Below are positions 3,173 to 30,401 of a stretch of 64,000 nucleotides of DNA, one piece after another. Numbering within the stretch: position 1 is the first letter of the stretch; every line of letters starts with the position of its first letter. The translations under genes and the position numbers were made by a program. The notes below the pieces were generated by a model. It was not told where the DNA came from and ran no database searches. It worked only from the letters and a program-made list of their open reading frames with translations. Where the stretch lies: the IMG/VR virus record IMGVR_UViG_3300017917_002434, positions 62,001-126,000 of that record; one strand, written 5' to 3'.

Positions 3173-5923
3173 ATGGCACTGTCTTGGATAACACCCCCTG
3201 GATCTCTAGGGAGCATAAATGAAAGAGACAGGCAAGAAATAACTTTACTTGCTACGTCTACTCAAGGTCCAGTGACCTTTTCTTTACAGGCAGGATCATT
3301 GCCACGGGGCCTAAGATTAGAAGAAAACAAAATCTTAGGCACGCCTTTCGAAGTTTCAAAACCTACTACAACTAGATTTGTTATAAGAGCATTTGACGGC
3401 TCTGAAAAGAAAGATAGAACTTTCAGTATTTCTGTAGGCGGATATGACGAACCTAAATGGGTAACAACCGAAGGTCTTTTACCTGTAGGTCCTAATTCAA
3501 CATTCTTTGTCTTAGACAACGATAAGGTCGATTTTCAGTTAATGGCGATGGATCCGGATATGCCGGCTGGGGATACGATAGAGTATTATATTCCTTACAA
3601 CGGTGGTGAACTTCCGCCAGGGCTTACTCTTTCTAGATCAGGTCGAATCACAGGTTTCACTGATCCTATCTTTGCCTTAGAATATAAAATATACAGCGGT
3701 AATTATGATCTCAACTTGTTTGATTCAGAGCCTTACGATTTAGGTACTAGACCGATTAACGGTTTTGACAGTTTCTCGTTTGACGAAAGAACTTTTGATT
3801 ATTTTGACGAAACAGGATTCCCAAGACGGTTGACTAGGTATTATCAGTTTACTGTTGTTGCTACGGACGGGTTATTTGAGGATCGCCGAACATTCCAAAT
3901 TTATGTAGTCAGCGAAGATTTTTTAAGATCTGATAACACAATAATGCAGGTTGGCACAGGTATATTCCGTGCGGATAACACCTATGTTAGACAGCCGATA
4001 TGGATCACTGAACCAGATCTAGGACAACGACGTGCTAACAACTATGTTACAATATACCTCGATGTTTTCGATCCCCCATCGATGCCTGGATATATTTCAT
4101 ATAGGTTTGAAATAATCAATCCAGAATTTAGCGGTAAAACCGTAAGAATTTTTAAAGACGAATCTGATTATATCGAAGTCGATATGATACCTGATATAAA
4201 AGGTGTTACAGGCCTCCCAAGAAAAAATCAAAAATTCAGTGTTGCCAATGTTTACAATTTCTTAGACAGTACACTGGGCACTTACACGATTCTCAATGTA
4301 GAGAAAATTGATGGGTATACTGATCGTTACGGAATAACATTTAATCCTAGCCTAGGCGAACGTGTTATACAAAATGCTGAAATTATATTCGGCAACGACA
4401 GTGCATTACCGCCCGGACTTGATCTAGACACGATCACTGGAGAGCTAGTAGGTAGTCTTCCATACCAGCCGAGAATTACTAAAGATTACAAATTTACTGT
4501 TAGTGCTGTTAATACCTACGACAACGGTGTATCAGCATCAACTCCTCGTACATTCAGTTTACGAGTATTAGGAGAAATAGAAAGCGGCATCGTTTGGATC
4601 TCTGACAGAGATTTAGGTTCTATTAGTCCTAACAAAGATAGTATGATATTTGTTGAAGCGTTGTCTAAACTAAATGGCGGAAACGTATTTTATCAATTGA
4701 GATCCGGTCAATTACCACCAGGACTGAGATTATTACCATCAGGAGAAATATACGGTAAAGTAAATCAGATAGGAACTTCTTCGTTATCGGGCATTACTAG
4801 ATTTTACAACAACTTTATTTTAGTTACTGGAATAACAGGTACCTTTACAATTGGTAGTGTTATTACTGGTTCAAATAGTCAGAATACCGCAAAAGTTATT
4901 GCGGTAGATTCTGACAAGATTTTTTATAAAGATTTATCAGGCAACTTTATAGTAGGTGATGTTATAACAGCCACAGGTGCTAGTGCTACATTTGTTAGTC
5001 ACAATAAGGATTTTACATCTACCACATACGATAGTAACCTAACATCCTTTGATAGAGTTTATACCTTTGTTATAGAAGCTAGAGATATATTAAACTATAC
5101 TGAAAGTGCTAAAACTTTTCAAATCACTGTACAGACACAGGCCGACATAGTTTACAGTAATCTCTATTTCAAAGCATATCAGAAAAAATCAAAGAGAGAA
5201 TTGTGGAATAATTTTATTTCTGACTTTTCAATCTTTACTCCTGAAAAAATATATAGATATGGTGATCCGGCTTTTGGTGTACAAGACGAAATAAAAATGT
5301 TGATGTTTGCGGGAATAGAAAGTAATAATGCCGAAACATTCATCCAAGCACTGAGTCGAAATCATTATTTTAAAAGGTTAAATTTTGGTTCTATCAAAAA
5401 AGCTGTAGCCAAAGATACAGCTACGCAATCAGTAATGTACGAAATCATATATGTGGAGATCGTCGATCCTTTAATTAAAAAGGGCAAAAGTATCTCGAAC
5501 GTAGTTACATTATCCGATAATATAAACAGTAGATTTCTAGTAAACAATACTAAAATCAATGTCAGTAGTGATATACCGTTAGCCAGCGATAGAGATCATC
5601 AACGTGTATTTCCAAACTCAATTAAAAACATGCGTAAACGAATTAAACAAACTGGAATACGAGATCGATCATATCTACCTCTATGGATGAGAAGCATCCA
5701 AGAGGATCAATTCGCAGAGCCGGGATTTGTCAGTGCGATGCCGCTGTGTTTTGCCAAACCTGGGCAAGCTGACGATATAATATTGAATATCCAGAAAAGC
5801 GGGTTTGATTTTAAAGTATTAGATTTTGAAGTAGATAGATATATCATAGATGCTTTAGATAGAGAAATCGAGGATAAATATCTCGCATTTCCAACATTTG
5901 AAGCGGACAAATTTAGACAATAA
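3173..5923 (+). CDS. Large baseplate/virion protein with putative Ig-like repeats
   Basis: Repeated G.LP.GL.L...G.I.G motifs; 916 aa; structural neighbourhood. Confidence 0.65.
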   Translation: MALSWITPPGSLGSINERDRQEITLLATSTQGPVTFSLQAGSLPRGLRLEENKILGTPFEVSKPTTTRFVIRAFDGSEKKDRTFSISVGGYDEPKWVTTEGLLPVGPNSTFFVLDNDKVDFQLMAMDPDMPAGDTIEYYIPYNGGELPPGLTLSRSGRITGFTDPIFALEYKIYSGNYDLNLFDSEPYDLGTRPINGFDSFSFDERTFDYFDETGFPRRLTRYYQFTVVATDGLFEDRRTFQIYVVSEDFLRSDNTIMQVGTGIFRADNTYVRQPIWITEPDLGQRRANNYVTIYLDVFDPPSMPGYISYRFEIINPEFSGKTVRIFKDESDYIEVDMIPDIKGVTGLPRKNQKFSVANVYNFLDSTLGTYTILNVEKIDGYTDRYGITFNPSLGERVIQNAEIIFGNDSALPPGLDLDTITGELVGSLPYQPRITKDYKFTVSAVNTYDNGVSASTPRTFSLRVLGEIESGIVWISDRDLGSISPNKDSMIFVEALSKLNGGNVFYQLRSGQLPPGLRLLPSGEIYGKVNQIGTSSLSGITRFYNNFILVTGITGTFTIGSVITGSNSQNTAKVIAVDSDKIFYKDLSGNFIVGDVITATGASATFVSHNKDFTSTTYDSNLTSFDRVYTFVIEARDILNYTESAKTFQITVQTQADIVYSNLYFKAYQKKSKRELWNNFISDFSIFTPEKIYRYGDPAFGVQDEIKMLMFAGIESNNAETFIQALSRNHYFKRLNFGSIKKAVAKDTATQSVMYEIIYVEIVDPLIKKGKSISNVVTLSDNINSRFLVNNTKINVSSDIPLASDRDHQRVFPNSIKNMRKRIKQTGIRDRSYLPLWMRSIQEDQFAEPGFVSAMPLCFAKPGQADDIILNIQKSGFDFKVLDFEVDRYIIDALDREIEDKYLAFPTFEADKFRQ

Positions 5924-5947
5924 ATACCTATAAGGTGGAGATAAAAG

Positions 5948-6538
5948 ATGCCAACAAACAGTAATATTAACGCAACAGCTATTGATGAAGCATATCCTGT
6001 TGCCGGTGTAGACAACGATACACAGGGTTTCAGAGACAATTTCTCTTATATTAAAACTGCGTTAAACGTTGCTAAAACAGAAATCACAGAACTTCTAAAT
6101 TTTACAGCCCGTCTGGATCGTGATAACAGCTACAATAACAAATTCTTATCAAATGCTGTTTTCAAACAGAACCAGCATAGCCTAAACAACTACGGTACTG
6201 GATCAGGTGTTGGTAATAGGATAGATATTAATTTTGGTAATGCTGATTATCAGGTTTATAGATTAGATGACGATGTAACATTTGAGTTCGAGGGCTTTTC
6301 GAATGATAACGTTAATAAAGTCACTATAGAATTACTATCCGATGGTGGAACCTATAATGTTTCATTTTTTACAGACGGTGCCTATCCTATTAAGAAAAGC
6401 AGTAATTTTCCAACATCGTTAACTGTATCCAGCACATCAAACCCAATCCTGATAGAAGTTATTACTAGGGCCAAGAGTCAAGATCCTGGATCATTAGGTA
6501 GAACTGTATTCCTTAACTATCTAGGACAATTTGTATAA
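5948..6538 (+). CDS. Putative virion structural protein
   Basis: Preceded by AATAAATA (5919-5926) and GGAG; YPVAGVDNDTQGFRDNF N-terminus; structural context. Confidence 0.5.
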   Translation: MPTNSNINATAIDEAYPVAGVDNDTQGFRDNFSYIKTALNVAKTEITELLNFTARLDRDNSYNNKFLSNAVFKQNQHSLNNYGTGSGVGNRIDINFGNADYQVYRLDDDVTFEFEGFSNDNVNKVTIELLSDGGTYNVSFFTDGAYPIKKSSNFPTSLTVSSTSNPILIEVITRAKSQDPGSLGRTVFLNYLGQFV

Positions 6539-6780
6539 TGTTTCATCCGCTTGAAGGTGATCTTAGTAAACTAAAAGATTCCGAAGTGGAATCTAAACTT
6601 CAAGAACTGACTAGAAAATACTATCAAGCATCTCGTTTAGGCAATCGAGAGCTATTGACACAACTGTCAACATTTGTTACAATATATAGAGAAGAAATGC
6701 GTAGCCGACAAGCCAAAGCATTATCTATAAACAATAATGTAACGAACGAAGACTTGGGTCAATTTATTAATGTCGATTAA
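6538..6780 (+). CDS. Hypothetical protein
   Basis: TAATG-coupled to the upstream gene. Confidence 0.6.
   Translation: MFHPLEGDLSKLKDSEVESKLQELTRKYYQASRLGNRELLTQLSTFVTIYREEMRSRQAKALSINNNVTNEDLGQFINVD
6655..6683 (+). promoter_or_regulatory. Sigma70-type promoter TTGACA-N17-TACAAT with palindromic -35
   Basis: TTGACA-caac-TGTCAA inverted repeat; lies at the structural/accessory boundary. Confidence 0.6.
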
Positions 6781-7243
6781 TACAAACGAAAATCTATTAC
6801 AAGGAATATTGAAACATGGTCCAAATATATTGGAGCATTGCCTTGTAGAAGAAAACAATCCAAATATCGAAAACTATATCCAAAGGATAAAGGAAGAAAA
6901 GCTCCTTTATCCTTTCCCGCTTACACAAGAACCTCAGGGTCGAAAATGGTTCATTCCTAAAGAGTACCGAGATTTTGATATCGAAGAATTTCTCTTAACC
7001 CAATGTCCTGAAGAAAATCTTGATAGGTTAGCGGAAGAATTAAAACTGTATAAAAAATACGACATGCTAGATCTTCTCAAAATGATGAAATATCTAGTAG
7101 ATAGCCTAAGAAAAAACAATATAGTATGGGGTGTAGGGCGAGGAAGTTCCGTTTCTAGCTACTGTTTATATCTAATAGGCATACATAAGATAGACAGCGT
7201 TAAATACAGATTACCAATATCTGACTTCTTTAAAGGAGAGTAA
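6770..7243 (+). CDS. Stand-alone fragment of DNA polymerase III alpha (DnaE palm region)
   Basis: RL.EEL...GVGRGSSVSSYCLYLIGIHKID..KY.L matches DnaE GPGRGS.AGSLVAY.LGIT..DP. Confidence 0.8.
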   Translation: MSINTNENLLQGILKHGPNILEHCLVEENNPNIENYIQRIKEEKLLYPFPLTQEPQGRKWFIPKEYRDFDIEEFLLTQCPEENLDRLAEELKLYKKYDMLDLLKMMKYLVDSLRKNNIVWGVGRGSSVSSYCLYLIGIHKIDSVKYRLPISDFFKGE

Positions 7244-7244
7244 A

Positions 7245-7466
7245 ATGGGAAAAACTTATAGAACTATGCAGGGCAAAGAAATCGACATGGAAAAACTTGC
7301 TCTATTAAACGAACTAACTCCAGCAGTAGGAAATGCTAGAGTAAACGCCAGAGGCGACGAACTAGGTCCCGGTGGCCAAATCATCAGAAAGCGTGAAGAC
7401 ATCGTTTCGGATTATTACGAAAAAAATCCTAAGAGTGTAAAATCGGAAAAGAAAGCTCAGGAATAA
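7245..7466 (+). CDS. Hypothetical protein
   Basis: Strong AGGAG ribosome-binding site; 73 aa. Confidence 0.65.
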   Translation: MGKTYRTMQGKEIDMEKLALLNELTPAVGNARVNARGDELGPGGQIIRKREDIVSDYYEKNPKSVKSEKKAQE

Positions 7467-7467
7467 C

Positions 7468-7827
7468 ATGGCTGCGTACGAACCTAAAAAAATACAAATC
7501 AAAGCTATCCGAGATAATGTTCTTGTCACTGACATGGATTTCGGAGAACAAAAAACTAGCTCTGGTATTATTTTAAAATCCGACGACGGTAAAGTACACG
7601 GCATCAAACCTCGTTGGGGCAAGGTTTACAAAATTGGGCCTGAGCAGACAGATGTAAAAGAAGGGCAGTGGGTCTTAATCGAGCACGGAAGATGGACCAG
7701 AGGCATGGAAATAGATGATGGCAACGGTAAAAAAACTATCCGTAAAGTCGATGTTAATGCCATGTTAGCAATCTCCAACGAGCCCCCAACATCTGAAGAT
7801 CTTTATATACCACCAGTAAATTCGTAA
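7468..7827 (+). CDS. groES: GroES/Cpn10-like co-chaperonin
   Basis: IRDNVLV, mobile loop EQKTSSGIIL, G.V..IGP, VKEGQ.V. Confidence 0.8.
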   Translation: MAAYEPKKIQIKAIRDNVLVTDMDFGEQKTSSGIILKSDDGKVHGIKPRWGKVYKIGPEQTDVKEGQWVLIEHGRWTRGMEIDDGNGKKTIRKVDVNAMLAISNEPPTSEDLYIPPVNS

Positions 7828-8072
7828 TGGGCTTTAGGAAAAGTTGGGATGCTGCTGATATCGCTAATCAGCTACATTCTCTCTCTAGAGAATGTTCTAG
7901 TGCCTATAACGATGGCTTCACAGCGTTTGAATGTAAAAAAGATCTTTATTTGATAAAACATTTAGTAGATGCTGCTCTAGCAGACGCACCTAATTTCGGT
8001 GTTATAGAAGAACGATGGCTCGAAGAACAAGAGAAGAAAAAAGTAATTAAATTTCTTAAGGAAAAACCATGA
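7827..8072 (+). CDS. Hypothetical protein
   Basis: Translationally coupled on both sides. Confidence 0.6.
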   Translation: MGFRKSWDAADIANQLHSLSRECSSAYNDGFTAFECKKDLYLIKHLVDAALADAPNFGVIEERWLEEQEKKKVIKFLKEKP

Positions 8073-8464
8073 CCAACCCATTTAGAGATCAAGAAAAATT
8101 TATGCGGGCTTGCGATCAAAGTACTGACATAGAAAACTATGATCAATACAAAATGTACCTGAGTCTGATAAAAGAAGAATATAACGAGCTTCTAGTTGCT
8201 CAGGGCATTGATCTAACAACTATGGAACAGGTCAATCCTGCGGATCCTGTAGAAGTTCTAGATGCTTTGATAGATATTCTTGTTGTAACTATTGGTGCTA
8301 TCCATAGCATGGGTGCTGATGGAGAAGGTGCTTGGAAAGAAGTCATGCGTACCAACTTTGCTAAAATCGACAAAGATACCGGCAAGGTTCGTAAGCGTGA
8401 AGATGGCAAAGTACTCAAACCCGTAGGTTGGAATCCACCGGATCTTAAACCCTTTGTTAAATGA
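8069..8464 (+). CDS. MazG-like/PRA-PH-type all-alpha NTP pyrophosphatase
   Basis: LIKEEYNEL...LDALIDIL, EV..TN.AK, REDGKVLKP.GW.PPDL. Confidence 0.8.
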   Translation: MTNPFRDQEKFMRACDQSTDIENYDQYKMYLSLIKEEYNELLVAQGIDLTTMEQVNPADPVEVLDALIDILVVTIGAIHSMGADGEGAWKEVMRTNFAKIDKDTGKVRKREDGKVLKPVGWNPPDLKPFVK

Positions 8465-9219
8465 AACGATCATTACTGATAGTAATATCAGTACTGGTGA
8501 TATCAAAGGCTCATGCTAGAAATGAGCCTTCTCATTTAGTCCTCGATATTAGCAAAAAGGAAACAATATCTTCTGCTTACGAAGATAAACTCCGTCCTAT
8601 TGCTTCTATTACCAAATTAATGACTGCCCTAATTGTTGTAGAATCAAAGTTAGAAATGTCAGAAGAAGTCGCTTATAAAGGCGGAATATGGCGACACAAA
8701 AAAGTAAAGAGATCAGACCTATTAGAATCCTTGTTGATTAAAAGTGATAATCAAGCCGCTGAAGCTTTGGCGAATTCTTATCCGGGAGGCAGAGAAGCTT
8801 TTATAACAACTATGAATTCCAGAGCTAGATCGTTAGGCATGCTCAATACTAGTTTCGAAGATCCTAGCGGTCTCGGTAGATACAATATCAGTACAGCTAG
8901 AGATTTAACTTTGCTAGTTTCTAAAACTTATCAACATCCAGAAATCAGTAGTACATCATCATCCAAATTTTTTAAAGTAGAAATTAAAAATAAGAAAAAA
9001 ATTACATACATGACTGTTGGAAATACCAATAGCCATCTATTGAGCCTTTTTGATAATATTACTTTGAGTAAAACCGGCTATACGGATCCAGCAGGTCGCT
9101 GTTTGGCATTAATAGTTGAGAAAAATAATAACAAGTATGCTATAATAATACTAGGAGAAAGAACGTCTGGTGATAGATTTTATCGTGCCAGAAACTTGAT
9201 TAATATGGTGTCAGAATGA
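8461..9219 (+). CDS. D-Ala-D-Ala peptidase, family S11 (PBP7/PbpG-like), with signal peptide
   Basis: SxxK (ASITKLMT), SxN (SDN) and KTG motifs; hydrophobic N-terminus. Confidence 0.88.
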   Translation: MKRSLLIVISVLVISKAHARNEPSHLVLDISKKETISSAYEDKLRPIASITKLMTALIVVESKLEMSEEVAYKGGIWRHKKVKRSDLLESLLIKSDNQAAEALANSYPGGREAFITTMNSRARSLGMLNTSFEDPSGLGRYNISTARDLTLLVSKTYQHPEISSTSSSKFFKVEIKNKKKITYMTVGNTNSHLLSLFDNITLSKTGYTDPAGRCLALIVEKNNNKYAIIILGERTSGDRFYRARNLINMVSE

Positions 9220-9650
9220 AAATTGGTTTTACTTGCTCAACCTTCGACTTGTTTCACGCAGGGCATATTATAATGCTCAAGGAAGCTAAATCACAATGTG
9301 ATTACCTTATAGTAGGGTTACAGACAGATCCTACTATCGACCGACCCGTGGAGAAAAATAAACCAGTTCAAAGTATATTTGAACGATTTGTCCAATTACA
9401 GGCCTGTAAGTATGTAGATGAAATCGTAGTCTATGCTACAGAAAAAGAGTTAGTTGACATCTTGCTTTCTTATCCTATTGATGTTAGAATATTAGGTAAT
9501 GAGTACGAGAATAAATCGTTTACTGGTAGAGCAGAATGTGTAGACAAAGGTATCAAATTCTATTTCAATAATAGAGCACACAGTTTTTCTACTACTGAGT
9601 TAAGACAACGTGTTATCGAGGCAGAAGCAGAAAAGGTATTGAGATTATGA
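9216..9650 (+). CDS. Cytidylyltransferase (TagD/glycerol-3-phosphate CT-like)
   Basis: FDLFHAGH (HxGH) and the C-terminal R..SFSTT motif. Confidence 0.85.
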   Translation: MKIGFTCSTFDLFHAGHIIMLKEAKSQCDYLIVGLQTDPTIDRPVEKNKPVQSIFERFVQLQACKYVDEIVVYATEKELVDILLSYPIDVRILGNEYENKSFTGRAECVDKGIKFYFNNRAHSFSTTELRQRVIEAEAEKVLRL

Positions 9651-9862
9651 GCATGGATCAGGCGGCTATTTTTTTAGCCAGTAGTGTATTAGTGATGCTA
9701 GGATTTACTGTGATAGTTATCGGGTGTGTAACTATCAATAATATTATTCACAAATACTGGAAAAATCTTGGATGGAGAATTTTTCCGTCGCATTGGGACG
9801 AACATTCACCCAGATTCGCAGAGCCTCATGAATTAAATCAAATTAACAAGGATAAAAAATGA
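9647..9862 (+). CDS. Small membrane protein
   Basis: One long hydrophobic segment; coupled to neighbours. Confidence 0.55.
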   Translation: MSMDQAAIFLASSVLVMLGFTVIVIGCVTINNIIHKYWKNLGWRIFPSHWDEHSPRFAEPHELNQINKDKK

Positions 9863-10779
9863 GAGAGCTATGGGTAGAAAAATATCGACCTAAAAGTGTA
9901 GATGGTTATGTATTTAGGGATGATCATCAAAGAAAACAAGTAGAAACTTGGATCAAAGACAAGAGCATCCCGCACTTACTATTAAGCGGCAATGCCGGCA
10001 TTGGTAAAACAACATTAGCTAAGATTCTAATAAACGAACTTGGCATAGAAGAATATGATGTTTTAGAACTAAACGCATCACGTACTAACTCTGTCGAAGA
10101 TGTGCGTGATAAAATTACTAACTTCGTCCAGATGATTCCATTTGGACCTTTTAAGGTGGTGCTATTAGATGAAGCTGATTATCTTAGTCCGAACGCTCAG
10201 GCGGCGTTACGTGGGGTCATGGAGGAGTATCATTCAACTGCTCGTTTCATCCTCACCTGTAACTACCCTAATCGCATTATCCCTGCTTTACACTCACGAT
10301 GTCAAGGATTTCACGTTGAGCGAACGGATCTTACTGAGTTTACCGCTCGTGTTGCTACTGTTCTTGTTGAGGAGGCTGTGGATTTCGATCTTGAGACGCT
10401 AGACAACTATGTTAAAGTAACTTATCCCGATTTAAGAAAGTGTATTAACCTTGTTCAACAAAATGTTCAGGAAGGAAAACTCATGTCTCCAAATAAAGGT
10501 GATGAAGGTACAGCAGATTGGAAATTCGATATGGTCGAACTCTTCAACGCAGGTAAACTCAACGAAGCACGTAAATTACTCTGTGGCAAATTAAGAGCCG
10601 AGGAGATGGAAGAAGTCTATCGATGGCTCTACGATAATATCAACATTTTTGGCGACGAAGCAAAACAAGACAATGCTATCCTTATTATCAAACAAGGTTT
10701 AGTCGATCATACATTGATTTCCGATCCCGAAATTAATCTTTCAGCAACATTAGTTAAGTTGGCAAAACTAAAGGCATGA
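9859..10779 (+). CDS. Clamp loader AAA+ subunit (RFC small/T4 gp44-like)
   Basis: LWVEKYRP, Walker A GNAGIGKTT, ELNAS, LDEAD, SRC motif. Confidence 0.92.
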   Translation: MRELWVEKYRPKSVDGYVFRDDHQRKQVETWIKDKSIPHLLLSGNAGIGKTTLAKILINELGIEEYDVLELNASRTNSVEDVRDKITNFVQMIPFGPFKVVLLDEADYLSPNAQAALRGVMEEYHSTARFILTCNYPNRIIPALHSRCQGFHVERTDLTEFTARVATVLVEEAVDFDLETLDNYVKVTYPDLRKCINLVQQNVQEGKLMSPNKGDEGTADWKFDMVELFNAGKLNEARKLLCGKLRAEEMEEVYRWLYDNINIFGDEAKQDNAILIIKQGLVDHTLISDPEINLSATLVKLAKLKA

Positions 10780-11288
10780 AACAAAAATTTATTAATCTCT
10801 ATATGGACTGGGCCAAGAGATGTTCTAAGCTCAGTCATGCTATGAGATTACAGGTAGGGGCAGTTATCGTAAAAGATGATTCGGTTATAAGTTACGGTTA
10901 CAACGGTATGCCTGCGGGATGGAATAACGACTGCGAAGATAAGGTATTCGATCCCGGTGCTGGAGGTTGGCTCAGCCCTAAAGAATTTAAAGATCAATAT
11001 CCTTATAGTGAATGGCACCCTGAAGTACAACGCGAAGTCCACTATGGGTTAAAAACCAAACCCGAAGTCTTACATGCTGAATCTAACGCTATAGCTAAAT
11101 TGGCAAGATCGTCTAACAGTGGGTTGGACGCAGATATCTTTATCACTCATGCCCCATGTATCGAATGTGCTAAATTAATCTATCAGTCTGGAATCAGACG
11201 TGTGTTTTATGGACACGATTATCGAGACGATGCTGGTATTAAATTTTTAAAAAAATCTAATATAAAAGTTGAAAAGGTAGAAACTTGA
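10776..11288 (+). CDS. dCMP deaminase
   Basis: VGAVIV, GYNG, HAESNA, PCIEC zinc motifs. Confidence 0.9.
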   Translation: MKQKFINLYMDWAKRCSKLSHAMRLQVGAVIVKDDSVISYGYNGMPAGWNNDCEDKVFDPGAGGWLSPKEFKDQYPYSEWHPEVQREVHYGLKTKPEVLHAESNAIAKLARSSNSGLDADIFITHAPCIECAKLIYQSGIRRVFYGHDYRDDAGIKFLKKSNIKVEKVET

Positions 11289-11524
11289 AGTACAGATATA
11301 TGCTTGTCTCCTATCACCCCAGACGTGATGGAAAATATGATGAACTAACTGAATTTAAAAACAGTCTAAAATTTAAGCACAGACATCATGCTAAGGTCAT
11401 CTTAGACCTTAAGAAAAAAACTGTTCTCAAAAACGAGTTGAACCCCAACGCCTCTTTTAATGATTTGTTGGAGTTCTATAAGAAAGTTATTGGTTCTACT
11501 CTGCTCGATTACCTCCCGTCATAA
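11285..11524 (+). CDS. Hypothetical protein
   Basis: TTGA-coupled; 3' end overlaps the convergent phoH. Confidence 0.5.
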   Translation: MKYRYMLVSYHPRRDGKYDELTEFKNSLKFKHRHHAKVILDLKKKTVLKNELNPNASFNDLLEFYKKVIGSTLLDYLPS

Positions 11525-12249
11525 TCTCCGTAGATTGCTAATATCTCTTTGACCGCTTGGTGTCTTTCTACATCTTCGACACTAAACTGGCAGATATCAA
11601 CATGTTTGTGGTTTTTAAAATTATCGTATAATTTTAAGAACTCAAGAAGCCCGTTTGATGCTGGTCTGTCTGCCTGTTGTAAATCTCCCGTCACTATCAT
11701 CCTAGAGCCTTCGCCCAATCTAGTCAGTAGCATCTTCATTTGACTAGGGGTCGCATTCTGCATCTCGTCAGCGATAATAAAACTCTTTTTGAATGTTCGT
11801 CCTCTCATATATGCTAAAGGACTGATCTCAATCACCCCCTCTTTTATAAAATTTTCTATTTCTTTAGCATAATAGTATTCTTCGAATACATCAAAAATCG
11901 GGCGAGTCCAAGGTTCCATCTTTTGCTGTAAGGTTCCTGGCAGGAATCCATGCTGCTCATCCACACTTACAGCGGGACGAGTAACCACGATCTTATCGAT
12001 CTCTCCTTCTTGGAACAGTTTGACTGCCCACTGACAGGCCAGCATAGTTTTGCCCGTACCCGCAGGTCCTATAGCAAATACTATGTTTTTCTGTTCTTCT
12101 TGGAGTTTTAAGAGATAATTCTCTTGATTGAGGTTTTTAGGATATATCAGTACCCTGTTTTTCTTTTTTGGAAGGAATTTATTTAGTTGAACTACGTTAT
12201 CATGCTCTTGTACAGCCAGATTTTTAACTGATTTTCTTTGTTTTCTCAA
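11509..12249 (-). CDS. phoH: PhoH-like ATPase
   Basis: GPAGTGKT, RPAV, GFLPG, YMRGRTF, DEMQN, TRLG, GDLQQ; TTG start with AGGAGG RBS. Confidence 0.93.
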   Translation of the reverse strand: MRKQRKSVKNLAVQEHDNVVQLNKFLPKKKNRVLIYPKNLNQENYLLKLQEEQKNIVFAIGPAGTGKTMLACQWAVKLFQEGEIDKIVVTRPAVSVDEQHGFLPGTLQQKMEPWTRPIFDVFEEYYYAKEIENFIKEGVIEISPLAYMRGRTFKKSFIIADEMQNATPSQMKMLLTRLGEGSRMIVTGDLQQADRPASNGLLEFLKLYDNFKNHKHVDICQFSVEDVERHQAVKEILAIYGDYDGR

Positions 12250-27734: not shown

Positions 27735-30401
27735 TTGAGTTACGTTGACGCATTCTATAATCGCGATCAGGATACTATCCATATTGTCGAACGAGACGAT
27801 AAAGGAATTAGGCATTTTAAAGAATATCCTGCTCGACACATCTTTTACTTTCAAGACCCTAAAGGAAAATACACTAGTACTCACGGAGAACCGCTGAGCC
27901 GTGTAACCTGTAAAAATCTCAAAGATTTACATAAAGAACTTAAAATACATAGTGGCATGAAGCTCTACGAATCGGACATAAATCCGATTTATCGCTGTCT
28001 CGAAGACAATTATCTAAATCAAGATTCTCCTAAATTACAAGTAGCGTTTTTTGATATTGAAGTTGACTTTGATCCGGAACGTGGTTACGCATCGCCTGAA
28101 GATGCTTTTATGCCGATTACTGCTATAGCTATTCATTTACAATGGCTGAATACTCTAGTTTGTTTAGCCCTACCTCCAAAAACGCTAACTTTAGAAGAAG
28201 CCAAAAAACAAGTATCTGAATTTCCTAATACATATATCTTCGAAACAGAGGCTGAACTATTAGATAACTTCTTAAATCTCATCCAAGATGCTGATGTGTT
28301 AAGTGGTTGGAACTCAGAAGGCTTTGATATTCCTTACACAGTTAATCGTGTTACCAAAGTTCTCAGCAAAGATGACACAAGACGTTTCTGTTTGTGGGAT
28401 CAATATCCTAAGAAGCGTGAATACGAGAAATATGGTAGAACTTCTGTGACCTATGATCTCGTAGGTAGAGTACATCTAGATTTATTAGAAATCTATAGAA
28501 AATATACCTACGAAGAAAGACATTCGTATCGACTAGATGCTATCGCCGAATATGAATTAGGAGAAACTAAAACAGTCTATGAAGGTACATTAGATCAACT
28601 TTACAATAATGATTTCAAAAAGTTCATCGAATACAATAGACAAGACTGTGCTCTACTAGATAAACTAGACAATAAACTTAAATTCTTGGATCTCGCTAAT
28701 AAGATCGCACACGAAAATACAGTATTACTACAGACTACAATGGGTGCTGTAGCTGTTACAGAGCAGGCTATCATTAACGAGGCACATCGTAGAGGGATGA
28801 TAGTACCCAATCGGGTAAGAAGAGAACCTGGCTCTGAGCCAGCTGCTGGTGCTTATGTCGCTTATCCTAAGAAAGGCATCCACGAATGGATTGGTTCAGT
28901 TGATATTAACTCACTGTATCCTTCAGCAATTCGTGCCTTAAACATGGGACCAGAGACTATCGTAGGACAGTTGCGTCAAGACTACACTAAAAACTATATC
29001 GATCAAGAAATGGGCAAAGGAAAATCTTTCGCCGCTGCTTGGGAAGGTATATTTGGTAGTCTAGAATACGAATATGTGATGGAAAGAAACGTTGCCAAAG
29101 AAATTACTATCGACTGGGAAGGTGGGGGTAGTGATACACTCAGCGGTGCTCAGATCTATGATCTTATATTCGAAAACAATCAACCTTGGATGCTATCAGC
29201 AAACGGTACTATCTTTACCTACGAAAAAGAAGGTATTATTCCCGGACTGTTAAAGCGTTGGTATGCTGAACGTAAAGAGATGCAGGCCAAACTTAAAGAA
29301 TGTATCGCTGCTGGTAATAAAGTAGAAGAAGAATACTGGGACAAGCGACAGCTAGTTAAGAAGATTAATTTGAACAGTTTGTACGGTGCTATTCTTAATC
29401 CGGGTTGTAGGTTCTTTGATAATAGGATCGGTCAGAGTACTACACTCAGTGGTAGACAGATCGTCAAACATATGGCTAGTAAGATCAATGAAATAGCCAC
29501 AGGAGAATATGATTACAAAGGTAAAGCTGTAATCTACGGTGATACAGACTCATGTTATTTCTCAGCCTATCCTGTATTAAAGAAAGAAATTGAATCTGGA
29601 CAGTTGCCGTGGACCAAAGAAACTGTGGTTCAACTCTATGATCAGATCGCCGACGAAGTAAATGCCAGCTTTCCAAAAATGATGCAGGATAAGTTTCATT
29701 GTCCTAAGACTCGCGGAGAAGTTATTAAAGCAGGTAGAGAACTTGTTGCTTCAAAGGGGCTGTTTATTACCAAGAAGCGTTATGCTGTACTTTATTATGA
29801 TAAAGAAGGCAAACGTACAGATGTTAATGATAAACCTGGTAAAATCAAAGCCATGGGTCTTGATCTGAAACGTTCAGATACTCCTGTTGTAATTCAAGAC
29901 TTCCTTAGCAAAGTACTCGAGATGGTACTTAATGGTGTTCCTAGAGAAGAAGTTCTAGAATACATCACTGATTTCCGTACAGAGTTTAAGACTAGACCTG
30001 GTTGGGAGAAAGGTTCACCTAAACGTGCCAACAACATTACCGAGTATCAGGCTAAAGAAAAGAAACAAGGCAAAGCCAACATGCCCGGCCATGTTCGAGC
30101 TAGCTTAAACTGGAATACTCTGAAACGTATGCATGACGACAAGTACTCTATGGGGATCACTGACGGTGCTAAGGTTATTGTTTGTAAAGTCAAAGATAAT
30201 CCAATGGGCTATACTTCAGTGGCATACCCTGTTGACGAACTTAGATTGCCGCAATGGTTCAAAGATCTTCCGTTCGATGATTCCGAGATGGAGACTACAG
30301 TCATCGACGAAAAGCTAGAAAACCTTATTGGTGTTTTGGAATGGGACATCAGTTCAACAAGGTCAGATAACACATTCAGCAAATTGTTTGATTTTGAGTA
30401 A
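27735..30401 (+). CDS. Family B DNA polymerase (gp43-like) with 3'-5' exonuclease
   Basis: FDIEVD, GWNSEGFD, YNRQD, DINSLYPS, KINLNSLYG, YGDTDS, KKRY; TTG start. Confidence 0.96.
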   Translation: MSYVDAFYNRDQDTIHIVERDDKGIRHFKEYPARHIFYFQDPKGKYTSTHGEPLSRVTCKNLKDLHKELKIHSGMKLYESDINPIYRCLEDNYLNQDSPKLQVAFFDIEVDFDPERGYASPEDAFMPITAIAIHLQWLNTLVCLALPPKTLTLEEAKKQVSEFPNTYIFETEAELLDNFLNLIQDADVLSGWNSEGFDIPYTVNRVTKVLSKDDTRRFCLWDQYPKKREYEKYGRTSVTYDLVGRVHLDLLEIYRKYTYEERHSYRLDAIAEYELGETKTVYEGTLDQLYNNDFKKFIEYNRQDCALLDKLDNKLKFLDLANKIAHENTVLLQTTMGAVAVTEQAIINEAHRRGMIVPNRVRREPGSEPAAGAYVAYPKKGIHEWIGSVDINSLYPSAIRALNMGPETIVGQLRQDYTKNYIDQEMGKGKSFAAAWEGIFGSLEYEYVMERNVAKEITIDWEGGGSDTLSGAQIYDLIFENNQPWMLSANGTIFTYEKEGIIPGLLKRWYAERKEMQAKLKECIAAGNKVEEEYWDKRQLVKKINLNSLYGAILNPGCRFFDNRIGQSTTLSGRQIVKHMASKINEIATGEYDYKGKAVIYGDTDSCYFSAYPVLKKEIESGQLPWTKETVVQLYDQIADEVNASFPKMMQDKFHCPKTRGEVIKAGRELVASKGLFITKKRYAVLYYDKEGKRTDVNDKPGKIKAMGLDLKRSDTPVVIQDFLSKVLEMVLNGVPREEVLEYITDFRTEFKTRPGWEKGSPKRANNITEYQAKEKKQGKANMPGHVRASLNWNTLKRMHDDKYSMGITDGAKVIVCKVKDNPMGYTSVAYPVDELRLPQWFKDLPFDDSEMETTVIDEKLENLIGVLEWDISSTRSDNTFSKLFDFE

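What the first reader, a model, noticed from the sequence alone, without database searches (positions are those of the whole stretch)
6770..7243. Mini-DnaE that stops just before the catalytic aspartates
Seen: a 157-aa ORF matching the DnaE segment from RL..EL through GRGS to DP..Y.L.F..F, ending cleanly where DnaE continues into PDxDxD. The next gene follows with a good RBS and no frameshifted continuation is apparent. The phage has its own PolB. Inference: one piece of a split C-family polymerase encoded in dispersed genes, or a repurposed decoy or nucleotide-binding module.
Basis: partly seen in the sequence, partly recalled or inferred. Interest (0 to 1): 0.6.

Follow-up and report, generated by a model that had tools for sequence, protein, structure and literature searches.

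The report
Half of a split mini DnaE polymerase
This small jumbo-phage gene encodes the front half of a stripped-down bacterial-type DNA polymerase core whose back half, with the catalytic aspartates, lies 186 kb away in the same genome, an arrangement already described by computation in 2021 and never tested at the bench.

Summary
Window 6770-7243 (+) encodes a 157-aa protein that matches the DnaE / Pol III alpha palm through the GRGS motif (Pfam PF07733, E 7e-12, profile positions 12-94 of 260). It stops a few residues before PDxDxD. The same genome (269.7 kb IMG/VR jumbo-phage record) encodes a 192-aa protein outside the window, at C1:255237-255815, that begins MPDIDIDF and continues with the third-Asp, ALxRPxK and KSHAxAY motifs. 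By structure the pieces map to E. coli alpha 277-395 and 400-784, so they abut at catalytic D401/D403. There is no PHP domain, the thumb is missing, and everything beyond the proximal fingers is absent. Both pieces belong to very large, length-constant families (more than 5,300 and more than 7,900 clusters). Both are under purifying selection, and they co-occurred in 10 of 10 cultured or complete genomes tested. A complex prediction passes (ipSAE 0.92, best control 0.01). No fused form and no intein was found. Iyer et al. 2021 (Viruses 13:63) already described this split minimal Pol III alpha in "group 2.2" jumbo phages, so this is a new member of a known, biochemically untested kind. One open point: a 202-kb record has the N-piece but no C-piece.

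The parts
6770..7243 (+). N-piece of the split minimal Pol III alpha (157 aa). Residues 1-56 are a family-specific helical extension. Residues 57-157 are the N-terminal half of the palm, with the invariant WGVGRGSSVxSY nucleotide-binding loop, and the protein ends ...LPISDFFKGE.
   Evidence: PF07733 E 7e-12. PHROG 11127 E 4e-44. VIA-align places residues 57-157 on E. coli alpha 277-395 (Z 8.6, rmsd 2.7, 94 aligned), and all ten rows listed with Z >= 2 are C-family polymerases. Invariant columns are. dN/dS against the closest relative is 0.083 and the family median is 0.32.
6538..6780 (+). Conserved 80-aa upstream neighbour of unknown function (phrog_15348). Its stop overlaps the N-piece start by 11 nt, which suggests translational coupling.
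   Evidence: Found upstream of the N-piece in 77 of 80 related loci. PHROG hit. The overlap is seen.
7245..7466 (+). Conserved 73-aa downstream neighbour of unknown function (phrog_14844). Its ribosome-binding site lies in the last codons of the N-piece.
   Evidence: Found downstream in 78 of 80 related loci. PHROG E 1.5e-13. AAAGGAGAG lies before the ATG.
7468..7827 (+). Cpn10/GroES-like (T4 gp31-like) co-chaperonin. It is part of the conserved neighbourhood and is not claimed as a polymerase part.
   Evidence: PF00166 E 6e-7 and phrog_931 E 8e-18. Present in 76 of 80 loci. The same order is seen in Atu_ph07 and CBB.
9859..10779 (+). RFC/gp44-like clamp-loader ATPase, context showing a T4-type replisome.
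   Evidence: PF00004 E 1e-16 and PF13177 E 3e-12. The syntenic gene is annotated as clamp loader in Atu_ph07 and CBB.
27735..30401 (+). Family B DNA polymerase (888 aa), the phage's main replicase. It coexists with the split mini Pol III alpha.
   Evidence: PF00136 E 6.7e-37 at C1:90752-91975. ORF coordinates.

Best explanation
The ORF is the N-terminal subunit of a two-subunit, minimal C-family (Pol III alpha / DnaE-like) nucleotidyltransferase core. The polypeptide is broken inside the Pol-beta-like active site. The N-piece carries the helix-GRGS nucleotide-binding loop. The separately encoded 192-aa C-piece (G000:C1:255237-255815, outside the window) carries the metal-binding PDIDID aspartates, the third aspartate (KIDFL), and the proximal finger motifs (ALIRPAK, YFKKSHAIAYA) that in DnaE contact dNTP and template. 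The two proteins are inferred to assemble non-covalently. In the model the GRGS loop packs on the DxD strand, and the family-specific first 56 residues of the N-piece supply much of the interface. Assembly would reconstitute one active site. What is shown: homology, exact contiguity of the pieces, co-occurrence, purifying selection, and conservation of all catalytic motifs. What is predicted: heterodimer formation. What is inferred: that the assembled enzyme is a template-dependent DNA polymerase of low intrinsic processivity working beside the T4-type PolB replisome, in repair, gap filling or a specialised step. The low-processivity inference rests on the absence of a PHP domain, thumb, clamp-binding domain, OB fold and tau-binding domain.
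For: The N-piece is the DnaE palm N-half. The C-piece starts MPDIDIDF and matches PHROG 11778 at E 8.5e-68 and full-length DnaE PHROG 405 at E 7e-12. It aligns collinearly to M. tuberculosis DnaE1 at 413-426 (MPDIDIDFDDRRRG), 564-663 and 773-787. By structure, residues 1-190 map to E. coli alpha 400-784 (Z 8.2), Taq 461-838 (Z 8.8) and PolC 971-1299 (Z 9.0). The top 14 hits are all C-family polymerases and the next row has Z 3.2. The N-piece ends at E. coli 395 and the C-piece begins at 400. Invariant residues are W120-Y131 (GRGS loop) in 51 N sequences, and D3, D5, D7, K66, D68, P136, K138, K165 and H168 in 44 C sequences. The complex prediction gave ipSAE 0.92, 0.92 and 0.91 against a best control of 0.01, with partner pLDDT 91 and at least 95% contact agreement. 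That mark was reached by 58 of 80 solved complexes and 2 of 110 mismatched pairs. N W120-G121 touch C I6-F8. Co-occurrence held in 5 of 5 and 5 of 5 genomes tested in the two directions, and one related 270-kb contig has the same spacing of about 184 kb. Median dN/dS is 0.32 for N and 0.15 for C. The same interpretation is published by Iyer et al. 2021, PMC7824862.
Against: There is no biochemical evidence anywhere for activity or assembly, and literature searches found none. The complex score may partly reflect the model's memory of intrachain contacts in solved DnaE and PolC structures, so it shows likeness rather than binding (caveat stated). Foldseek E-values for the single pieces are weak (best 3.9e-3 for C, 0.68 for N). 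The thumb and all duplex-DNA and clamp-binding domains are absent, so processive templated synthesis is not assured. One record called complete (G003) has an intact N-piece and no C-piece. The two genes sit in different, partly structural-gene neighbourhoods rather than with replication genes.
Confidence: 0.75

Rival explanations
1. The assembled two-piece enzyme is a Pol-beta-fold nucleotidyltransferase that is not a templated DNA polymerase. It could be, for example, a terminal transferase, a primer or tail-adding enzyme, or a nucleotide-signal synthase that reuses the DnaE active site.
For: The thumb, the clamp-binding domain with its duplex-DNA-binding elements (domain content from published DnaE structures), the OB fold and the distal fingers are all missing. 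About 375 DnaE residues are compressed into about 175. The phage already has a full PolB replisome. The genes lie among structural and unknown genes.
Against: The finger motifs that in DnaE contact dNTP and template (ALxRPxK, YFKKSHAxAY) are invariant or nearly so. The closest relatives by sequence and fold are only replicative C-family polymerases.
Confidence: 0.12
2. The N-piece acts on its own as a nucleotide-binding module, regulator or decoy, independently of the C-piece.
For: G003 (202 kb, flagged as having terminal repeats and 100% complete) keeps an intact N-piece (E 7e-69 to the family profile). It has no C-piece by profile search, unfiltered hmmsearch, Pfam model, DNA pattern or motif scan. 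The pieces are encoded 4 to 186 kb apart in different neighbourhoods.
Against: The most conserved N-piece surface, the GRGS loop and C-terminal strand, is the predicted interface with the C-piece. Alone it lacks every metal ligand. All 10 cultured or complete genomes tested have both pieces. The completeness of G003 could not be verified, because the ends of the stored record are not repeated.
Confidence: 0.07
3. It is a decaying remnant of a once full-length phage dnaE, or an assembly artefact that cut a gene.
For: Only that it covers part of a Pfam domain.
Against: More than 5,300 homologous clusters exist, and the 120 listed are 153-165 aa long. C-termini in 80 loci end within a few residues of FFK. 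dN/dS is 0.08-0.6. The neighbourhood is conserved in 76-78 of 80 loci. The same split is seen in about 90 finished cultured phage genomes.
Confidence: 0.01
4. The two halves are joined covalently after translation by a split intein, as in cyanobacterial DnaE, or at the RNA level.
For: Split inteins are classically found in dnaE (established knowledge).
Against: There is no room for intein halves. The N-piece ends at the DnaE-homologous FFKGE. The C-piece starts with its initiator Met directly on PDIDIDF in 77 of 79 loci with ATG, and at most 41 open codons lie upstream. The two proteins have 157 and 192 aa in all, and the DnaE-like match runs to the junction end of each (N-piece residues 57-157, C-piece 1-190).
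Confidence: 0.01

Closest known systems
Split minimal DNA polymerase III alpha of 'group 2.2' jumbo phages (Iyer, Anantharaman, Krishnan, Burroughs, Aravind 2021, Viruses 13:63, PMC7824862; PHROGs 11127 and 11778)
   Same: It has the same two small proteins, an N-terminal NTP-binding half and a C-terminal Mg- and template-binding half. They are encoded by distant genes, beside a T4-like PolB, RFC-like clamp loader and the rest of that replisome. It shares the homologues (Atu_ph07, RaK2, GAP32, CBB, 121Q, PA5oct) and the gene order.
   Different: Nothing in kind. This copy comes from an uncultivated 270-kb IMG/VR phage and is 35-44% (N) and 40-56% (C) identical to the cultured-phage copies. New here are the residue-level junction mapping, dN/dS, the controlled complex prediction, the size of the metagenomic families, and the G003 exception.
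Bacterial replicative Pol III alpha (DnaE; E. coli 2HNH/5FKV, Taq 2HPI/3E0D, Mtb 5LEW/7PU7) and PolC (3F2B)
   Same: It has the Pol-beta-like palm with the GRGS loop, the PDxDxD and KxDFL aspartates, and the proximal finger motifs. The sequence is collinear with DnaE and the fold matches at Z 8-10.
   Different: It is made of two polypeptides rather than one, 349 aa in all against about 1,160. There is no PHP domain. The thumb is reduced to a hairpin: C-piece residues 15-50 stand for Mtb 427-563. Nothing lies beyond E. coli residue ~784, so the distal fingers, clamp-binding domain, OB fold and tau-binding tail (domain layout from published DnaE structures) are absent. A family-specific 56-residue N-terminal extension is added.
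Split-intein DnaE of cyanobacteria (dnaE-n / dnaE-c)
   Same: A dnaE encoded as two distant genes whose products must come together.
   Different: In cyanobacteria the halves carry intein fragments, are spliced into one full-length chain, and the break lies elsewhere in the protein (established knowledge). Here there are no intein residues and the break lies inside the active site.

Membership tests
Split minimal Pol III alpha of group 2.2 jumbo phages (Iyer et al. 2021) | [quoted passage not shown] | tested here: met
   PF07733 E 7e-12 on profile positions 12-94. PHROG 11127 E 4e-44. VIA Z 8.6 to E. coli alpha 277-395.
Split minimal Pol III alpha of group 2.2 jumbo phages (Iyer et al. 2021) | A second stand-alone protein in the same genome carrying the Mg-binding DxD and template-binding part, encoded at a distance | tested here: met
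   G000:C1:255237-255815, 192 aa, starts MPDIDIDF, and lies 186 kb from the N-piece. PHROG 11778 E 8.5e-68. VIA Z 8.2-9.0 to Pol III alpha and PolC.
Split minimal Pol III alpha of group 2.2 jumbo phages (Iyer et al. 2021) | No other Pol III alpha domains (PHP and the rest) in the genome | tested here: met
   PF02811 gave no match at E <= 10 in the 269.7-kb record. PF07733 and PF17657 hit only the two pieces. Caveat: the record is estimated to be 76% complete.
Split minimal Pol III alpha of group 2.2 jumbo phages (Iyer et al. 2021) | Coexistence with a T4-like family B polymerase and an RFC-like clamp loader in a jumbo myovirus genome | tested here: met
   PolB at window 27735-30401. Clamp loader at 9859-10779. 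Genome of at least 270 kb. Synteny with Atu_ph07 and CBB.
Split minimal Pol III alpha of group 2.2 jumbo phages (Iyer et al. 2021) | The two proteins reconstitute one active enzyme | tested here: inconclusive
   The prediction passes: ipSAE 0.92 against a best control of 0.01, a mark reached by 58 of 80 solved complexes and 2 of 110 mismatched pairs. It is a model and may draw on memory of single-chain DnaE. No experiment exists.
C-family DNA polymerase (DnaE/PolC) catalytic core | Three catalytic aspartates (PDxDxD plus KxDFL) and the GS nucleotide-binding motif | tested here: met
   GRGS is invariant in the N family. D3, D5, D7 and D68 are invariant in the C family. They align to MPDIDIDF and KMDFL of Mtb DnaE1.
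C-family DNA polymerase (DnaE/PolC) catalytic core | Single polypeptide with PHP, palm, thumb, fingers and clamp-binding domains | tested here: not met
   There are two polypeptides. There is no PHP. The thumb region is missing. Nothing lies beyond E. coli residue ~784. It is therefore a homologue of the core, not a canonical DnaE or PolC.
C-family DNA polymerase (DnaE/PolC) catalytic core | Template-directed DNA synthesis | not testable with these tools
   This needs a primer-extension assay with the purified pair.
Split-intein DnaE | Intein N- and C-fragments at the break | tested here: not met
   The N-piece ends at FFKGE. The C-piece starts at M-PDIDIDF, with at most 41 open codons upstream.

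The most novel reading that the evidence does not exclude
The break inside the active site is functional rather than incidental. The halves are encoded in different, separately conserved gene modules, so the enzyme would exist only when both modules are expressed, which would act as a built-in AND-gate on a second polymerase. Alternatively, the N-piece has a life of its own, as the 202-kb record with an N-piece but no C-piece hints. Either way the pair would be the smallest known C-family polymerase core (349 aa) and a model for the ancestral form of the bacterial replicase, as Iyer et al. suggested.
Probability: 0.15. Interest if true: 0.7.

Novelty: new member of a known kind. Interest (0 to 1): 0.4.

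Why it matters
C-family polymerases are the replicases of all bacteria, and they are large multi-domain single chains. A 349-residue, two-chain version that keeps every catalytic motif would define the minimal functional core of this family. It would give a tractable system for studying how the Pol-beta-like active site is assembled. It also bears on whether the bacterial replicase grew from a small nucleotidyltransferase. It raises the question of why jumbo phages with a complete T4-type PolB replisome keep a second polymerase under strong purifying selection in thousands of environmental genomes. The remaining value lies in the untested biochemistry.

Tried and rejected
1. Megablast of window 5000-12000 against cultured phages gave no match, so the genome has no close cultured relative.

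2. phmmer of the single pieces and the A1 profile against PDB sequences gave no significant DnaE hit. For N the E-value to Taq was 1.2. The A1 profile hit only an unrelated 'ORF67' at E 0.003, probably a helical or charged-region artefact. Pfam, PHROGs and structure alignment were needed.

3. Foldseek alone gave weak E-values. The VIA-align second look gave the usable mapping.

4. I looked for fused single-chain forms. None was found among 160 IMG/VR loci with 1.5-kb flanks or in the cultured phage records, where every record showed one place per piece. I did not run the exhaustive 1.84-billion-protein search for fused or cellular intermediates, because the operators asked to spare it and the main claim does not rest on absence.

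5. Remnant, artefact and split-intein readings were rejected (see the rival explanations).

7. Literature searches for biochemical follow-up returned only annotation labels.

8. The PaBG paper's 'polymerase III' mentions concern beta and gamma subunits, not this enzyme.

Full report
**1. The observation.**
Window 6770..7243 (+) is an ATG-to-TAA ORF of 157 aa. Its start overlaps the stop of an 80-aa upstream ORF by 11 nt. The ribosome-binding site of the next gene (AAAGGAGAG before the ATG at 7245) lies in its own last codons.

Pfam's DNA_pol3_alpha model (PF07733) matches residues 72-154 at E 7.1e-12. The match covers only profile positions 12-94 of 260. PHROG 11127, a 171-position family of small phage proteins labelled 'DNA polymerase', matches end to end at E 3.8e-44. 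DRLAEEL and GRGS are present.

The ORF therefore does stop just short of the PDxDxD aspartates. A six-frame search of the genome with PF07733 shows no frameshifted continuation next to it. The phage's own family B polymerase is in the window at 27735..30401.

**2. The missing half exists.**
The window is C1:62001-126000 of a 269,730-bp IMG/VR virus record that CheckV estimates to be 76% complete. The same PF07733 search gave a second, weak hit at C1:255192-255281. It covers profile positions 86-115, which is where the first hit ends. PF17657 (the Pol III finger domain) hit 300 nt further on.

The ORF there (L004:1546-2124, which is C1:255237-255815, 192 aa) begins MPDIDIDF. It continues with HNTGVY, FKIDFLN, ALIRPAK and YFKKSHAIAYA. 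It matches PHROG 11778 (197 positions) at E 8.5e-68, and the full-length DnaE family PHROG 405 at E 7e-12.

A profile of its family aligns collinearly with M. tuberculosis DnaE1:
- residues 1-14 on DnaE1 413-426 (MPDIDIDFDDRRRG)
- residues 51-137 on DnaE1 564-663 (KMDFLGL ... ALYRPG)
- residues 160-174 on DnaE1 773-787 (YAFNKSHAAGYGM)

No PHP domain is detectable in the genome.

**3. Structure-based mapping.**
AlphaFold2 models built on family alignments have mean pLDDT 88.4 for N and 83.4 for C. Foldseek E-values are weak (best 3.9e-3 for C and 0.68 for N), but the top 16 hits for C are all C-family polymerases.

The VIA-align second look gives these ranges:

| Piece | Residues | E. coli alpha | Mtb DnaE1 | Taq | PolC |
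|---|---|---|---|---|---|
| N | 57-157 | 277-395 (Z 8.6, rmsd 2.7, 94 aligned) | 306-415 | 294-457 | 821-966 |
| C | 1-190 | 400-784 (Z 8.2, rmsd 4.8, 187 aligned) | 419-811 | 461-838 (Z 8.8) | 971-1299 (Z 9.0) |

For N, all ten rows listed with Z >= 2 are C-family polymerases. For C, the top 14 rows are C-family polymerases and the next row has Z 3.2.

The two proteins are therefore exactly contiguous in DnaE terms. They meet at the catalytic D401/D403 of E. coli alpha; those residue numbers are from the published literature.

C-piece residues 15-50 stand in for Mtb 427-563, so about 100 residues corresponding to the thumb are gone. Nothing corresponds to DnaE beyond about residue 784. The distal fingers, clamp-binding domain, OB fold and tau-binding tail are absent. 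N-piece residues 1-56 have no DnaE counterpart in these alignments.

**4. This is a family, not a remnant.**
The word-index search found 5,311 clusters for N and at least 7,983 for C at E <= 1e-3. The 120 listed for each have lengths of 153-165 aa and 191-205 aa.

- In 51 N sequences, W120-G-V-G-R-G-S-S-V-x-S-Y131 is invariant. So are W60, F61, P63 and Y66 in the extension.
- In 44 C sequences, D3, D5, D7, F8, H34, T36, G37, K66, D68, F69, L70, N71, P136, K138, F164, K165, H168 and A169 are invariant.
- In 80 + 80 IMG/VR loci, N-pieces end within a few residues of FFK.
- C-pieces start on M-PDIDIDF, with ATG in 77 of 79 loci and at most 41 open codons upstream.
- No locus has the other piece within 1.5 kb.

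Nei-Gojobori dN/dS over pairs with dS between 0.05 and 1.5 has a median of 0.32 for N (0.083 against the closest relative) and 0.15 for C. dS is high for most pairs, so these figures are rough. The direction, purifying selection, is clear.

**5. Partnership.**
In the cultured-phage collection the N-piece hits 82 records and the C-piece 96, in the same groups: RaK2, GAP32, CBB, 121Q and PBECO4, Atu_ph07, XaC1, RsoM2USA and PA5oct. The difference in counts reflects sensitivity.
- With the N profile, 5 of 5 C-bearing genomes that were absent from the listed part of the N hit list have an N-piece. These are Phosso, Vibrio phage 2.275.O, SCTP-2 and two IMG/VR genomes.
- With the C profile, 5 of 5 cultured N-bearing genomes have a C-piece.

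Spacing ranges from about 4 kb (RsoM2USA) to 184-186 kb (this genome and IMGVR_UViG_3300024503_000015).

Each piece sits in its own conserved neighbourhood:
- N lies between an 80-aa and a 73-aa protein of unknown function, followed by a Cpn10/gp31-like gene.
- C lies after phrog_11758, a C2H2-like zinc-finger protein (phrog_11058) and a 70-aa acidic protein. It is followed by a reverse-strand phrog_11637 gene.

The complex prediction with both alignments gave ipSAE 0.92, 0.92 and 0.91 against a best control of 0.01. Partner pLDDT was 91 and contact agreement at least 95%. The mark was reached by 58 of 80 solved complexes and 2 of 110 mismatched pairs, though those counts hold only roughly because my own alignments were used. 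In the model the GRGS loop (N 112-130) lies on the DxD strand (C 2-9). N 146-155 lies on the KSHAxAYA helix (C 165-178). The N-terminal extension (N 1-25 and 51-61) clasps C 13-21 and 40-48. This supports binding but does not show it. Because single-chain DnaE structures are solved, part of the score may be memory of intrachain packing.

**6. Mechanism.**
The break falls between the two halves of the Pol-beta-like signature, the GS loop and the DxD. Neither protein can therefore be catalytically complete alone.

The most economical reading is a non-covalent heterodimer that rebuilds one active site. The retained finger motifs argue for templated dNTP incorporation. The missing thumb, clamp-binding and OB domains argue against autonomous processive replication.

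With a full T4-type replisome present (PolB, RFC-like loader), I rate a specialised or repair polymerase role as most likely. This step is inference. It coincides with the suggestion of Iyer et al.

A split intein is excluded by the lack of any extra residues at the junction. A stand-alone role for the N-piece is unlikely but not excluded (see section 8).

**7. Comparison with what is known.**
Iyer, Anantharaman, Krishnan, Burroughs and Aravind (Viruses 2021, 13:63; PMC7824862) describe the group 2.2 jumbo phages. [quoted passage not shown] They propose it as a model of the ancestral enzyme.

The present locus meets every defining feature that could be tested (see the membership table). Later papers in the searchable library only carry annotation labels such as 'DNA polymerase III DnaE'. 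I found no biochemical or structural study.

The finding is therefore a new, ordinary member of a known but experimentally untouched kind.

**8. The open point.**
IMGVR_UViG_3300046318_000439 (G003) is 202,272 bp and is flagged as having direct terminal repeats and being 100% complete. It has an intact N-piece (E 7e-69 to the family profile) with the usual upstream neighbour. It has no C-piece by any of these tests:
- profile search
- unfiltered hmmsearch on all stop-to-stop frames, best E 2.9
- Pfam model
- DNA pattern
- motif scan

None of the C-piece's conserved neighbours is present either. The ends of the stored record are not repeated, so completeness could not be verified. Either the record is not complete, or the N-piece can persist alone.

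**9. Not done.**
The exhaustive representative search for fused or cellular intermediates was not run, to spare the costly resource, since the main claim does not rest on absence.

**10. Verdict.**
- Observation: confirmed.
- Novelty: new member of a known kind.
- Interest: 0.4. The biology is striking and untested at the bench, but it was already published as a computational prediction.

Noticed in passing
G003 = IMGVR_UViG_3300046318_000439, N-piece at 97656-98132 (-); loci L038, L170-L181: A 202-kb record flagged as complete has an intact, well-conserved N-piece. It has no C-piece and none of the C-piece's conserved neighbours. Either the 'complete' call is wrong or the N-piece can persist alone.
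   Followed up: partly
G003 97223-97684 (-); own genome C1:245080-245865 and C1:246520-247449 (L187:81-863, L187:1521-2447): In G003 the usual 73-aa gene downstream of the N-piece is replaced by a 154-aa frame that is 70% identical to part of an ORF in this genome. Other shared genes are 25-40% identical. A weaker paralogue lies 1.4 kb away. There is no Pfam match. This looks like a mobile or recently exchanged gene.
   Followed up: partly
L004:2107-2121 (C-piece residues 188-192) and alignment A2: The extreme C-terminus of the C-piece, (I/V)SY(G/E)(Y/F)(S/T), is conserved (S188 invariant, Y189 at least 90%) but modelled with low confidence (pLDDT 48). This is the pattern of a short linear docking motif, possibly for the phage sliding clamp or another partner. 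It was not tested.
   Followed up: no
window 8461-9219 (+): A phage-encoded D-alanyl-D-alanine carboxypeptidase (Peptidase_S11, E 6e-41) with a hydrophobic, signal-peptide-like N-terminus (judged by eye from the translation). It sits between a MazG-like pyrophosphatase (8069-8464) and a cytidylyltransferase-like gene (9216-9650). This is an unusual cell-wall enzyme for a phage replication and morphogenesis cluster.
   Followed up: partly
window 3173-5923 (+): A 916-aa protein with three He_PIG Ig-like repeats (E 1e-17), probably a virion or baseplate-associated structural protein. The N-piece therefore lies directly downstream of structural genes rather than among replication genes.
   Followed up: partly
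L004:651-1334 and L004:1334-1546 (C1:254342-255025 and 255025-255237): Upstream of the C-piece lies a conserved 227-aa protein with an N-terminal C2H2-like zinc finger (phrog_11058, in 73 of 80 loci). After it comes a 70-aa very acidic protein whose stop overlaps the C-piece start (TAATG). Both are possible accessory factors of the mini polymerase.
   Followed up: partly
Ralstonia phage RsoM2USA MG752970.1, 133300-133872 and 138064-138585 (both -): In this phage the two pieces lie only about 4 kb apart on the same strand, against 30-186 kb in others. The spacing of the halves is therefore highly variable across the group.
   Followed up: no
PDB 9tic_d 'ORF67' against alignment A1 positions 37-104: The N-piece family profile gives a marginal hit (E 0.003) to a 124-aa 'ORF67' chain over the helical, charged region preceding the palm. 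It is probably compositional and was not pursued.
   Followed up: no
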